Assembly: GCA_039096225.1 (NCBI GenBank)
Contig: JBBPEB010000028.1
Coordinates: 186,001 to 250,000, forward strand
Length of the DNA stretch: 64,000 bases
Direction of reading: 5' to 3'
DNA from: Blastocystis sp. Blastoise
Taxonomy: Eukaryota; Protista; Bigyra: Opalinata
The notes beneath the pieces were generated by a model. It worked only from the letters and a program-made list of their open reading frames with translations, did no database searches and had not been told where the DNA came from. How positions within the stretch are numbered: position 1 is the first letter of the stretch; each line of letters starts with the position of its first letter. The position numbers and the translations under genes are program-made. Below, one piece after another: positions 37,255-63,549 of this stretch.

Positions 37255-40479
<3,225 letters not shown>

Positions 40480-58051: not shown

Positions 58052-60518
58052 TTTTTAATAGATAATAATTATATTATTATATTATTACCTTTTTCTATTC
58101 CTACTGTTTCTTCTCTAGAATGACAGTCTGATGACACTCTACACACAATTCCACAATACCGATTCTCTTCAGTATATATATGATATCATCTCCTTCTTCT
58201 CTCCAACCCAACTGCAACAACAATGTGAAGTATATATATATATATATATATAGATTATCACATAGAGTATATTATATATTTATACTATTATTTATATATA
58301 TATAATAGAATTATAATATAGAATACATGAATAGTAACTCATTTCATATATATCTTATATATATATATATTATATATATAGACCTTCTACACAAGTATTT
58401 TATCGGTATCAATTACAAATAATTGGAATTTTGATAGTATATCAGCATATATATATACTATTTTCTCCTGGAATCTTCAAAATGACTTTATTCAGTCTAT
58501 TCTGAAAGTGACTGAAGAGTATTTTAAGAACCCTTCGTTATGTATACATAAATATGAAGATGAAGAAGAGAAAGAGAAAGAGAAAGAAGAGAAGAAAAAG
58601 GAAAAGAAGAAGTCTAAAGGAAAAAAAGGGAAGGGAAAGAAAAATGCAGTTATAGAAGAACATCCTGTGATTGACCAAACAACTGATTCCCACGGTTCTG
58701 ACGAGGAAATTGATATATATTTAGCTGTTAGTATTCTTGAAGTTGTTATTCGTTTATATATTCAATGGTATATATATATAAGTATGATTACTATACATAT
58801 ATATAGTGATATTTCATTGGATAGTACGGTAACTACGTTAATTCACCGTACATTCACACCTCTTCTTCCTATTCTTAATACTTTATTCCAAGATATAATC
58901 GTGAATAAACAGTTTGATTGGCAGATTATTGAAGTATATTCACGGTTATTTATACTTTACTGTAAATTGGAAATATATGAAATTGCAAGCAAAAGAGATA
59001 AACAATCAGATTCATTTGAGTATATGTCAACTAGTCTAGCCTTAACGGACCTCACATCTACTATTCAATCTCTATGTGATAATCAAGATAATATCACTAA
59101 TTACTGTATATATATTTATATAGAATTATTGTGTATATACTAACATTATTTATAATATATTTTAATATAATATAACATATATATAGCCCTTCGATTCTTG
59201 TATACTCTGTCTTCTATTCAATTATCATTATTATATACATCAATTTCTATCTATCAATATGATGAACAAGTTGTCCATAATACCTTTATATATATGACAT
59301 CTCTCTCTACCTGCCCTCAACTCTACCAAACCCCCGCGGGAGAACCTGCTGATTCTCCAGAATATTCTTTCTTTATTACTCATAATCTTCCTCTATTTAA
59401 TAAACTCATCTATCTATTATATAATACACTCAAATCATTGCCTATTGTTGTATATATATATTATTATTAATATTATACTTATTATACTTATACTTATTAT
59501 TATCTCTTTTTATTATTATTATTATTAATATATATATATATATAGACGATTGACTCCTACTTATCCTATATATATGTTATACTATCTTCATATCCCGCGG
59601 TTTTCCTTCATGTTTTAAGTACAATTCGTTCTATTATTCGAATAGAATGTATTCAAAATAAAAATGATGCTCTTTGCTTATATTTACTAAGTCAAATTGA
59701 AACAGAAGTCAATAATAAAAAAGAAGGTATATTATTATATTTATTATACTATTATTAACTAAGTTATTATAATAATAATAATTATTATTATTATATATAA
59801 TACACATATATATTATTTATATACCTATTAATATACAGAGCTTTCTGTATTAAATATTAATAACGATCTTTCTACTTTCAGCTTCTCTACGTTATCTGCT
59901 GAATTCTTCTTAATTTGTTCATCTTCAATTCCTTTATTTCAATATGTATATATATATATTTAATATATTGAATATATTAATTTATATACTATTATTTATA
60001 TACTATTATTTATATTATATATATTCTTAGAGTTATCATTTCTTTTTAAATAAAATGAATTCATTATCGGTTTCTCCTTCTTCTTATCATCAATATAAAG
60101 CTTATTTATATATATTATATATATTATACAAAGCAAATAATAGACGTATAACAATAAAACAAGTTCCTCAATTAGTTAAAGAACTCGATGAATTTGAAAT
60201 AAAATGTATAATTATTTATTATTATTATTATTATTATTAATATATTATTATTATTATTATTATTATTAATATATATATTTATTAACATATATATTATTAT
60301 TAACATATATATTATTATTCTTAATATATATATTATTCTATATAGTTCATAGTCAAGTTATGAGTAATCAAGAATTAAATGATGATAAGAATTCGAAAGA
60401 ACTCTATTTAGAAACATATAAAGCATTAGTCATTCTAATTGGATTCTTTAAAGAAACAAAACAAAAAGATAAAATAGACACACCCTCAGAAAAGAAATCA
60501 GAAGAACATGAAGAATAA
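54788..60518 (+). CDS. NCAPG2: Condensin II complex subunit G2, about 20 exons
   Basis: LLLKAIFSPPFLISKEGR, YGEILFQAW, YDPIIWRALNAANASVRKNA..LINVFPL, QKQFD, AVRVAAIEGVCKIL, YWELVP, LDNPLS, DKNERVR. Confidence 0.9.
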
Positions 60519-60738
60519 TCAAATGAATCAATATTTTTTTATATATATGTTTCTTGTTTTGAATAATCATAAATATATTTATCATTTATTCTCCACTCTA
60601 TATAATATACCATACTACTAATATTTTATATGCATACTTAATTTTTTTTTTCTTTTTTCCTTTTTTTAAATGTTTATATATTCGTAAATAAAGTAGCATA
60701 TATCATTTTATAATTGTCGTATTAGTTCTCATTATATA

Positions 60739-61087
60739 TTAGGACGTTGTAGTCCATTCTACTCGACATAAAGGACAACGTGATTCTTTTATTAACCATT
60801 TCTCCATACAATGCTTGTGAAATGAATGTCTACATTTTCCAGTAATTGGAGGACACGAATCTCCAGGAACTTTACAAGTTGGACAACAGGATTCGAATGG
60901 ATTCTGACAAATACCACAGCAATCATCATTTACATCCCATTCCCATTTTCCTACTGCATGAATTCTACAAGAATTATATATTATATTGTATAATTTGCTA
61001 CAAAACAAAAACTTACTCTATAGATGATAATAAATATAATTATAGGATTCATAAAAAAAGTAATATACTCTTAATAGTGACTTTCAT
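60739..61087 (-). CDS. APC11: Anaphase-promoting complex subunit 11 (RING-H2); exons 61087-61069, 61017 (1 nt) and 60964-60739
   Basis: MKVTIKKIHAVGKWEWDVNDDCCGICQNPFESCCPTCKVPGDSCP..GKCRHSFHKHCMEKWL...CPLCRVEW. Confidence 0.95.
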
Positions 61088-61516
61088 AACAAAAGAATAT
61101 ATTTTTAAACAAACAATTAAAAAAGCATTTTCAGTATAAGGCTGAAAAATTATTTCTATTCGTTACCCAAAAAAACCATGATTATCTTACAGAAATTAAA
61201 AAGAATGAAAAAAGAATAAGATCACTAAATAGTTCATCCAGTTATTTATTTGTATTCTTCGAGATTCTAACTATATAATTGGTAATTGATTTTGTTCATC
61301 CAATTATCTCGATAAAACCCACGACGTATGGAATTCCTTGTATAACGTGACTTGTTAGAAATAAGACGAAACTCCTATATAACCCATTCGTGATTATATA
61401 CTTTTATTTAAGAAAAGAGATTTTTCTTATTAATAATTCTGAACAAAAAACTTCAGAATCTTATCCTTTTGTTTTTTGCAGACAAAAGTTAACTTAATAA
61501 AATATAAATATAAATT

Positions 61517-63549
61517 ATGGGTCAACTAGAAAGTATAGAAATTGATGGTATTGGTGAACTTGAAACAAGAACTACTTTAAAAGGTGATTTAACATTAAGA
61601 GGAATTGCAGAATGTATCAAACGTGGTGAAGCTAAGAATATTGTTGTTATGTGTGGTGCTGGTATTTCAGTTTCTGCAGGTATACCAGATTTTCGATCAC
61701 CTGGAACTGGCTTGTATTATAATTTGAAGAAGTATCATCTTCCAGAGCCGGAGTGTATGTTTGATTTGAATTATTTTAAAGAAAAACCTGAAGCATTCTA
61801 TCGTTTTGTACTAGTATGTTATTTATTAATACTTTATTAGTTTATAGTTGATGTATTATATTCTATTTTATATTTGTATTCACTGTTTTATTAGTTTTTT
61901 TTTTCTTGTGATTCAAATAATTTTTGTTCTTTTGAGTTTTATATATATTTTTATTCTTTAGGAAATGTATCCAGATCAATATCTACCTACAATTACTCAT
62001 TATTTTATAAAATTATTATACAAAAAGAATTTATTGCTTCGTTGCTATACTCAGAATATTGATGATTTAGAGAGAAATGTTGATATTCCTGACAATCGTC
62101 TTGTTCAGTCCCACGGTTCTTTCTCTACTGCTTCTTGTATTAAATGTGGACGTCGTTATAAAACAGAAGTAGTGAAAAAAGCTGTTTTAAAAAGTATATA
62201 TATATATATATTTTGCATGTTTTATTTTTTATTATAATTATGATTAGTAATGTATATTTATTATATATCATTTTTATGTGTTTTTATCATTATTAATAGT
62301 TTTATTTTTTTTTTGATGTTTTATCATTAATAATAGTTTTATTTTTATATGTTTAATCATTAATTATTGTTTTTATTTATATATTTTATCAATGATAATA
62401 GTTTCATTTTGATTACATAATATCATTATACTATTAATTATATATATATAATAGATGAGATCCCTCATTGTAAGGAGAAGACTTGTCGTGGGTATATAAA
62501 GCCAGATATCGTATTCTTTGGGGAACCCCTACCTTTAAAGTTTAATATGTTAAATAAAGCAGATATGTTAGCGGCTGACTTACTGATTGTGATGGGAACA
62601 TCGCTACAAGTACAACCTTTCTGTGGTATATATATATATAATGTATAGTATACTTATTAAGATTATTATTAATAACAGTATTTTCAATAGTTGATTAGCT
62701 TATTACACTAGTCTATATTATATGTTAATAGAATCTTTTTTATTTATTTATTATCATGAATCATTCTATTGTATTATCTCTATATGTTTATATTATTTAT
62801 ATATCCATTATATATCACTTATATATTTATTATATATCACTTATATATTTATTATATATCATTTATATATTTATTATATATCATTTATATATATCTCTAT
62901 AGGTTTAGTAAATAAAGTGAAAGAAGATTGTCCTCGTCTTCTAATAAATAGAGAGCCTGTGGGTCCATTTCGTTTCTATACTATGGATTGTTGTTATAGA
63001 GATGTTGTGTATTTAGGGGATTGTGATAGTGGTGTACGTGCATTATGTAAAGAATTAGGTTGGCTTGACGAATTAGAGGACATGTTTACCAAGGGAAATA
63101 CTAAATTAGAAAAAATAAGACAGAAATATATTGCTTCTAAATTATTAGCAACTGCTAAGATAGATGAACATTTCCAGAATATAAATAATACTATAGAAAA
63201 AGATGAAGAAGGAAATGAGATTGTTAAAGAGCTGATGAAAGAGAAAGAGAAGGAAATAGAAACAAAGAAAGAAATGAAGAATAATGTTGAAAGTGAAATT
63301 GTGATATTACATAAAGATACAAAAGATATAAATACAACTTTACCCTTAGTAAAGTCAGAAGTACCTCTACCATCAATAGAGTCTAAACAAGATAGTTATA
63401 TACGTATGCGAAATTCTTCAGCGTCTTCTGTGAGTTCGGATATGCTATTATCAACAGATGATGATGATTTTACTTCTGATTATAATAGTATGAGACATCT
63501 TAATGGAAATATATCTCCTATTGGTAAAATACATACTATTAATATATAA
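61517..63549 (+). CDS. NAD-dependent deacetylase, class I sirtuin (SIRT2/Hst2-like), 4 exons
   Basis: GAGISVSAGIPDFRSPGTGLY, LLRCYTQNID, QSHGSF, KPDIVFFGEPLP, VMGTSLQVQPF, PRLLINRE, GDCDSGV. Confidence 0.95.

What the first reader, a model, noticed from the sequence alone, without database searches (positions are those of the whole stretch)
60965..61068. Single-nucleotide exon in APC11
Seen on the - strand: ATG AAA GTC ACT ATT AAG A | gtatat..ctatag | A (61017) | gtaagt..ttgtag | A ATT CAT GCA. Two clean GT-AG introns of 51 and 52 nt flank one A, so codon 7 (AAA) is built from three exons. Skipping the A gives a frameshift and a stop within four codons. Established: a one-nucleotide A exon has been described in Arabidopsis APC11, as I recall near the start of the CDS. 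Inference: if the position is the same, this microexon is shared between plants and this protist and is very ancient. It may be spliced sequentially, using the AG|A|GTAAGT site.
Basis: partly seen in the sequence, partly recalled or inferred. Interest (0 to 1): 0.85.

Follow-up and report, generated by a model that had tools for sequence, protein, structure and literature searches.

The report
One-letter exon in Blastocystis APC11
The cell-cycle gene APC11 of this gut protist contains an exon just one letter long, present in its RNA, at exactly the place where land plants have their known one-letter exon and where animal and slime-mould genes seem to need one, so this smallest possible exon is probably far older than plants.

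Summary
On the minus strand, a 19-nt first coding exon (61087-61069) is followed by a 51-nt GT-AG intron, a single A (61017), a 52-nt GT-AG intron and a 226-nt last coding exon (60964-39). Exon 3 encodes an APC11 RING-H2 domain starting at residue 8.

A spliced transcript contig from a public run ends at 60964. It continues with the last 13 nt of exon 1 plus one extra A, giving AAG AAA ATT. Neither neighbouring genomic base is an A, so only a 1-nt exon explains it.

The position matches land plants. In Brassica rapa and Dionaea muscipula, exon 1 is also 19 nt and the microexon is CDS nt 20.

The same layout occurs in Blastocystis ST1, with G instead of A. The same 19-nt exon 1 and one-nucleotide phase gap occur in Dictyostelium, two corals and a sea urchin, but without RNA evidence, and a donor 4 nt downstream is a rival there. 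A cockroach keeps only the upstream intron and the alga Tribonema only the downstream one. Oomycetes and soil fungi have neither.

The literature I could search places this microexon's origin in early plants. Deep, possibly LECA-age, ancestry is the likeliest reading. Sequential splicing is inferred, not shown.

The parts
61069..61087 (-). APC11 coding exon 1, 19 nt: start codon, MKVTIK, and the first base of codon 7
   Evidence: Its last 13 nt are joined to the extra A and exon 3 in the X1 transcript contig. MKVxIK is the conserved APC11 N-terminus.
61018..61068 (-). Intron 1, 51 nt, GTATAT...CTATAG, between CDS nt 19 and 20 (phase 1)
   Evidence: It is absent from the X1 contig. An intron at the same position occurs in plants, Blastocystis ST1, Dictyostelium, corals, a sea urchin and a cockroach.
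61017..61017 (-). One-nucleotide exon (A), CDS nt 20, second base of codon 7 (AAA, Lys)
   Evidence: It is the only AG|N|GT in the interval. The extra A is present in the transcript contig and cannot come from the flanking bases, which are G on both sides.
60965..61016 (-). Intron 2, 52 nt, GTAAGT...TTGTAG, between CDS nt 20 and 21 (phase 2)
   Evidence: Contigs from X1 and X2 both stop matching the genome exactly at 60964. An intron at the same position occurs in plants, Blastocystis ST1, Dictyostelium, corals, a sea urchin and Tribonema.
60739..60964 (-). Last coding exon, 226 nt: third base of codon 7, residues 8-81 (RING-H2 domain), and stop TAA at 60741-60739
   Evidence: Translation. Pfam zf-ANAPC11 80.4 bits against a cut-off of 25. 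Human APC11 6.8e-22, with query residue 3 aligned to chain residue 10. Alignment A1.

Best explanation
[quoted passage not shown] Its coding sequence has three exons of 19, 1 and 226 nt. The middle exon is the single A at window 61017 (minus strand), flanked by canonical GT-AG introns of 51 and 52 nt. The mature mRNA contains this A as the second base of codon 7. Without it the frame breaks and the RING domain is lost.

Shown here:
- the genomic anatomy;
- the extra A in a spliced transcript;
- the identity of the protein;
- the same coordinate (CDS nt 20, after a 19-nt exon 1) as the land-plant APC11 microexon and as Blastocystis ST1.

Inferred: the two introns are removed one after the other. 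The 3' splice site of intron 1 and the 5' splice site of intron 2 are one base apart and cannot be occupied together. After either intron is removed, the A becomes the terminal base of an ordinary exon next to an ordinary splice site (GAA|GTAAGT, or CTATAG|AAATT).

Also inferred: the two introns, at nt 19/20 and 20/21, are old and inherited rather than reinvented, because both positions recur, together or singly, in four eukaryotic supergroups.
For: Anatomy.

RNA:
- The X1 contig covers 60346-60964 and then continues with exon 1's last 13 nt plus an A.
- The 13-mer is unique at 61069-61081, and the 14-mer is absent from the genome.
- The other end of the same contig is a GT-AG splice of the neighbouring gene (intron 60206-60345), so the contig comes from RNA.
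- A contig from a poly-A gut metatranscriptome (X2) also stops at 60964.

Identity:
- Pfam zf-ANAPC11 1e-22.
- Human APC11 is the top solved-structure match, well above RBX1 and RBX2.
- Exon 3 starts at the residue that aligns with residue 8 of full-length APC11.
- There is one APC11 copy, plus a separate RBX1-like gene.

Same position elsewhere:
- Plants: L005 and L008 have a 19-nt exon 1, then ...CAG|A|GTA..., then an exon 3 that starts with the last base of codon 7. In Brassica intron 1 is 333 nt, which fits the 'A333' of PMC4674806.
- Blastocystis ST1 (L048): 19 nt | 34-nt intron | G | 46-nt intron. This gives an N-terminus of the same length. The deposited protein starts at an internal Met instead.
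- Wider: Dictyostelium, Pocillopora and Porites and Lytechinus all have a 19-nt exon 1 and an exon 3 that starts one base before the Trp-8 codon.
- Half-states: Blattella has only the intron at 19/20. Tribonema has only the intron at 20/21.
Against: - The RNA evidence is one assembled contig with a 14-nt overhang, plus one contig that merely ends at the junction. No raw reads were available, so neither minor isoforms nor the share of transcripts that include the A could be measured.
- The contig does not reach the ATG, so the start codon rests on homology.
- The order of intron removal is not observed.
- Outside Blastocystis and plants the microexon is inferred from genomic phase alone. In species whose intron-1 donor is GTRAGT or GTATGT, a donor 4 nt downstream also restores the frame by adding one residue. 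The Dictyostelium database model uses this donor, and the eight residues before Trp in the Glandiceps (hemichordate) protein model suggest the same, though its genome was not inspected.
- In the long animal introns AG|N|GT is frequent by chance: 22 candidates in the sea urchin and 18 in Porites.
- The sequence around the two corals' candidate microexons is not conserved at BLAST level.
Confidence: 0.87

Rival explanations
1. The microexon here is real, but it arose independently of the plant one by parallel intron gain or splice-site sliding at a favoured site. The shared coordinate would then be convergence.
For: Intron sequences share nothing across groups. The microexon base differs: A here, G in ST1, A in plants. 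PMC8831610 concluded that the microexon evolved in early plants. Many lineages lack both introns, including oomycetes and soil fungi.
Against: The coordinate is identical to the nucleotide, with a 19-nt exon 1, in two Blastocystis lineages, two angiosperms, Dictyostelium, two corals and a sea urchin. Each of the two intron positions also exists alone in other lineages, Blattella and Tribonema. That is the pattern expected from loss of one of two old introns. Creating a 1-nt exon from one intron needs two coordinated changes, so repeated origin at one site is unlikely (inference).
Confidence: 0.22
2. There is no 1-nt exon. A single intron from the donor at 61068 to a downstream acceptor (exon resuming at 60953 or 60950) keeps the frame and gives a shorter APC11.
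For: One search shows that both models are open to the TAA stop (MKVTIK-IGKWEW... or MKVTIK-RKWEW...).
Against: The X1 and X2 contigs match the genome up to 60964, not 60953 or 60950. X1 then joins exon 1 through an extra A. These models also delete the conserved residues 8-11 that align across all APC11 proteins.
Confidence: 0.03
3. The extra A is not templated by 61017. It would come from polymerase slippage or RNA editing at the A-rich junction, or from an assembly error in the contig.
For: The junction lies in a short A run (AAGA|AATT). The evidence is an assembled contig with a word depth of about 13.
Against: A run of three A is far shorter than known slippage sites (established knowledge). 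A perfectly placed CTATAG|A|GTAAGT sits in the interval, where only 5.5% of shuffles have any AG|N|GT. Blastocystis ST1 needs a G at the same place and has CTCTAG|G|GTAATT. Plants have experimental proof of templating: a mutated base in the gene appears in the cDNA (PMC4674806).
Confidence: 0.03

Closest known systems
The constitutive 1-nt exon of land-plant APC11 (Arabidopsis At3g05870, Guo and Liu 2015, PMC4674806; conserved from moss to angiosperms, Yu et al. 2022, PMC8831610)
   Same: It is the same gene and the same coordinate: a 19-nt exon 1, with the microexon at CDS nt 20, the second base of codon 7. I checked this on Brassica rapa and Dionaea muscipula genomic DNA. In both cases the microexon is flanked by AG and GT, skipping it shifts the frame, and gene predictors miss it and give wrong N-termini.
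   Different: The host is a stramenopile gut protist, not a plant. The introns are 51 and 52 nt, against hundreds of nt in plants. Codon 7 is AAA (Lys), not CAG or CAA (Gln). Intron 1 here starts GTATAT, whereas the two plant genes start GTATCCTT, a U12-like signal. There is no mutational proof here.
The 1-nt exon of Fusarium CYP621A P450 genes (Nelson and Syed 2026, PMC12940212) and of plant VPS55 (PMC8831610)
   Same: A single nucleotide in an AG|N|GT context is required to reconcile a phase-1 exon end with a phase-2 exon start. It is supported by transcript reads and missed by annotation.
   Different: These are unrelated genes and positions, each restricted to one clade. The APC11 case now appears in several supergroups.
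Recursive (ratchet-point) splicing sites, AG|GTAAGT, of long animal introns
   Same: A 3' splice site sits directly next to a strong 5' splice site, so the flanking sequence has to be removed in two successive steps.
   Different: At a ratchet point nothing is kept. Here one base is kept and is coding, and the introns are tiny. No intermediates were observed here.

Membership tests
[quoted passage not shown] | RING-H2 domain matching the APC11 profile above its curated threshold, and scoring better than the RBX1 profile | tested here: met
   zf-ANAPC11 scores 80.4 bits (cut-off 25) against zf-rbx1 at 73.3. Human APC11 chains score 6.8e-22, against RBX2 at 1e-13 and RBX1 at 1e-11.
[quoted passage not shown] | Short N-terminal strand MKVxIK, then one residue, then an aromatic or aliphatic residue 8, with no long N-terminal extension as in RBX1 | tested here: met
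   Exon 1 encodes MKVTIK. Exon 3 begins at the residue that aligns with residue 8. The transcript joins them through one codon, AAA.
[quoted passage not shown] | Distinct from the cullin partner RBX1 encoded in the same genome | tested here: met
   The genome search finds one APC11 locus and a separate locus on contig C8 that scores best as zf-rbx1.
[quoted passage not shown] | Binds APC2 and recruits E2 enzymes in the APC/C | not testable with these tools
   No assay was possible. No complex prediction was run, because that would need the joined spliced protein.
One-nucleotide exon of the plant APC11 type | The mature RNA carries a nucleotide that is not contiguous with either flanking exon in the genome | tested here: met
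   The X1 contig reads exon 1 (13 nt), then A, then exon 3. The genomic neighbours are G on both sides.
One-nucleotide exon of the plant APC11 type | That nucleotide lies between an AG and a GT inside the interval, giving two canonical introns | tested here: met
   CTATAG|A|GTAAGT at 61017 is the only such site in the interval.
One-nucleotide exon of the plant APC11 type | Same codon position as in plants (orthologous intron positions) | tested here: met
   Exon 1 is 19 nt and the microexon is CDS nt 20 in the window gene, Brassica rapa L008 and Dionaea muscipula L005.
One-nucleotide exon of the plant APC11 type | A change of the genomic base is copied into the cDNA (templating shown by mutation) | not testable with these tools
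   Done only for Arabidopsis (PMC4674806).
Recursive or sequential splicing | Partly spliced intermediates in which exactly one of the two introns has been removed | not tested
   Only assembled contigs were available and the single read-laying run was used. No intermediate was seen, which proves nothing.
U12-type (minor) intron | 5' splice site RTATCCTT and branch site TCCTTRAY close to the 3' end | tested here: not met
   Intron 1 starts GTATATTAC and intron 2 starts GTAAGT. By contrast, the two plant intron 1 sequences do carry GTATCCTT.

The most novel reading that the evidence does not exclude
The APC11 one-nucleotide exon is not a plant invention. It would be a relic of two introns one base apart that already existed in the last common ancestor of plants, stramenopiles, amoebozoans and animals, that is, at or near LECA. 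It survives intact in land plants, Blastocystis, Dictyostelium, corals and sea urchins. It is half-resolved in insects and Tribonema, and erased in oomycetes, the soil fungi sampled here and, according to PMC8831610, most monocots. That would make it the oldest and most widely conserved microexon known. It would also explain a systematic annotation error in invertebrate and protist APC11 models.
Probability: 0.6. Interest if true: 0.9.

Novelty: new member of a known kind. Interest (0 to 1): 0.8.

Why it matters
One-nucleotide exons are the lower limit of what a spliceosome can keep. The held literature knows them only in land-plant APC11 and VPS55 and in one Fusarium P450, and it dates the APC11 case to early plants (PMC8831610, PMC12940212).

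A transcript-supported copy at the identical nucleotide in a stramenopile changes that picture. So do matching gene structures in amoebozoans and animals. Together they turn a plant curiosity into a candidate for an exon kept since early eukaryote evolution.

This gives intron-evolution work a sharp test case: two introns one base apart, with clean single-loss states in other lineages.

It also gives splicing mechanics a natural substrate with very small introns (51 and 52 nt here, 34 and 46 nt in ST1).

Finally, it flags a recurrent error in deposited APC11 protein models, seen here as wrong or truncated N-termini in Blastocystis ST1, corals, sea urchins, molluscs and insects.

Tried and rejected
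- The first word-indexed protein search with exon 3 gave only two hits. The exhaustive HMMER search was needed.
- P0028 (Barthelona) has no genomic record. P0006, the closest unnamed relative at 60% identity, has a contig but its DNA could not be served. P0126 exists only as short, apparently intronless Logan contigs, so it says nothing about gene structure.
- The metagenome scan returned 34 soil loci, apparently fungal. All have a contiguous MKVxxKxW and no intron. They are useful only as a 'both introns absent' state.
- Runs X3 and X4 held nothing.
- NCBIfam has no model for the protein.
- The motif AGNGTAAGT is at chance frequency in the window. Its other copy, at 38336, lies antisense to a minus-strand gene. 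I therefore rejected the motif as evidence by itself.
- BLAST between the two corals' microexon neighbourhoods found no conserved island.
- In-frame single-intron models were enumerated and rejected against the contigs.
- Literature searches for APC11 or ANAPC11 microexons outside plants, for Blastocystis microexons, and for a U12 annotation of At3g05870 found nothing.
Searches used exon 3 by reference. The only joined reading was a local frame check. For that reason no structure or complex prediction of the full protein was made.

Full report
**1. What is in the sequence**

Read on the minus strand, the window has an ATG at 61087. This is followed by AAA GTC ACT ATT AAG A up to 61069.
- Next comes GTATAT...CTATAG (61068-61018, 51 nt).
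- Then a single A at 61017.
- Then GTAAGT...TTGTAG (61016-60965, 52 nt).
- Then A ATT CAT GCA..., running open to a TAA at 60741-60739.

Exon 1 translates to MKVTIK. The frame from 60963 gives a 74-residue RING-H2 sequence. Joining exon 1 directly to exon 3 gives a stop four codons after the junction.

**2. Which gene it is**

- The exon-3 product matches Pfam zf-ANAPC11 at 1e-22 (80.4 bits, cut-off 25), slightly better than zf-rbx1.
- Against solved structures the best matches are human APC11 chains of APC/C cryo-EM entries (6.8e-22). RBX2 and RBX1 score eight to ten orders of magnitude weaker.
- Query residue 3 aligns with APC11 residue 10, so exon 3 starts at residue 8. Alignment A1 shows the same.
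- The genome (33.3 Mb, 34 contigs) has one APC11 locus. A separate locus scores best as RBX1.
- Earlier notes of this scan call the genome a very AT-rich tortoise-gut Blastocystis. I did not verify that name independently. It is consistent that a gut poly-A metatranscriptome holds near-identical contigs, and that Blastocystis ST1 has the same unusual gene structure.

**3. RNA evidence**

Only assembled contigs were available.
- In run X1, a 2019-nt contig matches 60346-60964 without a mismatch. It then carries 14 further letters before it ends.
- On the minus strand these letters are the last 13 nt of exon 1 followed by one extra A. The RNA therefore reads ...ATT AAG AAA ATT CAT...
- The 13-mer occurs once in the window, at 61069-61081. 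The 14-mer does not occur at all.
- The base after exon 1 and the base before exon 3 are both G. No shift of a single intron's borders can supply an A.
- The other end of the same contig leaves the genome at 60346 and resumes at 60205, across a 140-nt GT-AG intron of the convergent neighbouring gene. The contig is therefore RNA-derived, although the run's library type is only guessed.
- A 206-nt contig of the poly-A metatranscriptome X2 also stops at 60964.

Limits: this is one contig with a 14-nt overhang. There are no read counts and no view of minor isoforms or intermediates. The contig does not reach the ATG.

**4. Rival gene models**

A local enumeration of GT/GC-AG models finds two in-frame single-intron alternatives, with the exon resuming at 60953 or 60950.
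- Both delete residues 8-11, which are conserved in all APC11 proteins.
- Both are contradicted by contigs that match the genome up to 60964.

The 104-nt interval contains exactly one AG|N|GT. Only 5.5% of composition-matched shuffles contain any. The nine-letter motif AGNGTAAGT alone is at chance level in the window, and its second copy is antisense to a gene. The case therefore rests on RNA and phase, not on the motif.

**5. Comparison with plants**

- Guo and Liu showed by cDNA sequencing and mutation that Arabidopsis APC11 has a constitutive 1-nt exon, 'A333' (PMC4674806).
- Yu et al. found it from moss to angiosperms, absent from annotations, and concluded that it 'evolved in early plants' (PMC8831610).
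- Neither text states the codon, so I fetched plant loci through mis-annotated proteins from the HMMER search.
- In Dionaea muscipula (L005), exon 1 is 19 nt, followed by GTATCC...AACAG|A|GTACGT...TGTAG|A TGG CAT.
- In Brassica rapa (L008), exon 1 is 19 nt, followed by GTATCC...AACAG|A|GTAAGT...TGTAG|G TGG CAT. Intron 1 is 333 nt long, which fits 'A333'.
- In both, the microexon is CDS nucleotide 20, the second base of codon 7. This gives the correct plant N-terminus MKVKILQW seen in well-annotated proteins. That is exactly the coordinate found in the window gene.

**6. Other eukaryotes**

| Species (locus) | Exon 1 and intron 1 donor | Microexon | Exon 3 start | Notes |
|---|---|---|---|---|
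| Blastocystis ST1 (L048) | 19 nt, GTGAGG, 34-nt intron | CTCTAG\|G\|GTAATT, then 46-nt intron | A TGG | N-terminus has the same length as here. Deposited protein KAM7455410.1 starts at an internal Met and lacks the N-terminal strand. No alternative donor 4 nt downstream. |
| Dictyostelium discoideum (L010) | 19 nt, GTATGT, 91-nt intron | TATAG\|G\|GTAAAT, then 86-nt intron | A TGG | Gives MKVTIKRW. The database model uses a weak donor 4 nt downstream and so has one extra residue (KSIW), unique in the alignment. |
| Pocillopora verrucosa (L011) | 19 nt, GTAAGT | TTCAG\|A\|GTGAGT, about 200 nt downstream | G TGG | The RefSeq model ends its spurious first exon at that same donor. |
| Porites harrisoni (L049) | 19 nt, GTGAGT | CAAAG\|A\|GTAAGC, about 200 nt downstream | G TGG | |
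| Lytechinus variegatus (L013) | 19 nt, GTAAGT | best candidate CACAG\|G\|GTAAGT | T TGG | Gives the animal consensus Ser-7. With 22 AG\|N\|GT sites in 9.3 kb, the candidate alone is weak. |
| Blattella germanica (L012) | 19 nt | none | GT TGG | One 88-nt intron, only at position 19/20. |
| Tribonema minus (L009) | 20 nt, GTAAGT | none | G TGG | Intron only at position 20/21. |

- Oomycetes and 34 soil loci, apparently fungal, have neither intron.
- Many deposited invertebrate APC11 models diverge just before Trp-8 or Ser-7. Others, the two Lytechinus models, read exon 1 in the wrong frame ('DESQ...').

Caveat: wherever intron 1 starts GTRAGT or GTATGT, a GT four bases downstream also restores the frame. 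For animals and Dictyostelium the microexon therefore remains an inference until RNA is examined. That donor would add a residue that no well-annotated APC11 in the set has, apart from the Dictyostelium and Glandiceps models discussed above.

**7. Interpretation**

The window gene has a real 1-nt exon, at the same coordinate as the plant one.
- Two introns one base apart (phase 1 at nt 19/20, phase 2 at nt 20/21) recur together in Archaeplastida, Stramenopila, Amoebozoa and Metazoa, and singly in other members of these groups.
- The simplest history is old origin followed by repeated loss of one or both introns.
- Independent reinvention at one nucleotide would need coordinated changes each time, so I rate it clearly less likely.

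On mechanism: the 3' splice site of intron 1 and the 5' splice site of intron 2 overlap in the space that their recognition factors occupy (established knowledge of U2AF and U1 footprints). Removal must therefore be stepwise. Either order leaves a normal substrate. The order is unknown.

**8. Novelty**

Searches of the held literature found the APC11 microexon only in plants, and no microexon report for Blastocystis. A 2026 paper still counts Arabidopsis APC11 as the only precedent for a 1-nt exon. As an object this is a new member of a known kind. The new content is its phylogenetic reach.

**9. Procedure note**

Exon 3 was searched by reference. The only joined reading was a local frame enumeration.

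Noticed in passing
L005:2020-2027 and 2693-2700; L008:1200-1207 and 1479-1487: In both plant APC11 genes, the intron upstream of the 1-nt exon starts with GTATCCTT, the U12-type 5' splice-site consensus. It also carries a perfect U12-type branch-site word (TCCTTAAC or TTCCTTGAC) 41-47 nt upstream of the microexon. Guo and Liu placed their putative branch A 44 nt upstream. If the minor spliceosome removes intron 1, its signals would sit clear of the U1 site of intron 2. No paper in the library links At3g05870 to U12.
   Followed up: partly
L010:1001-1200 (Dictyostelium discoideum APC11): The database protein (87 aa, ...KSIW...) uses a weak GTTTCT donor and has one residue more than every other APC11 in the alignment. 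A 1-nt exon G at L010:1111 would give the consensus ...KRW... The model is probably wrong.
   Followed up: partly
L048:3001-3341 (Blastocystis ST1, KAM7455410.1): The deposited ST1 protein lacks the N-terminus. Its model also appears to splice out about 40 nt near the 3' end, which removes the conserved Trp after the last Cys pair. Reading that stretch unspliced gives ...CRAKWEE..., which fits the family. ST1 also has a 31-nt intron inside the CPP-VTG stretch that the window gene lacks.
   Followed up: partly
L009:2524-2606 (Tribonema minus): A degenerate second copy of the start of exon 2 (WHGVAVWKWDVEDD.CGICRMAYDACC) lies inside the first intron, about 200 nt upstream of the real exon. It could be a pseudo-exon or an alternative exon.
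   Followed up: no
window 60176-60560 (+) and 60346-60738: The neighbouring plus-strand gene ends at 60518 after a 140-nt GT-AG intron (60206-60345). One transcript contig runs without a break from that gene's last exon into the APC11 exon on the other strand. The two convergent mRNAs therefore probably overlap in their 3' ends.
   Followed up: partly
window 61088-61516: APC11 and a sirtuin-family gene (plus strand, ATG at 61517) are divergent, with only about 430 nt between their start codons. A transcript contig of the sirtuin starts at 61434, so the two genes probably share a bidirectional promoter.
   Followed up: no
proteins P0069, P0072, P0073, P0090, P0127, P0224, P0227, P0229, P0230, P0231, P0310, P0312, P0319: Deposited APC11 models of corals, sea urchins, molluscs and insects have unrelated N-termini up to the residue before Trp-8 or Ser-7. 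Some of them, the two Lytechinus models, read the 19-nt first exon in the wrong frame. This looks like a systematic annotation error caused by the tiny first exon and, where present, the 1-nt exon.
   Followed up: partly
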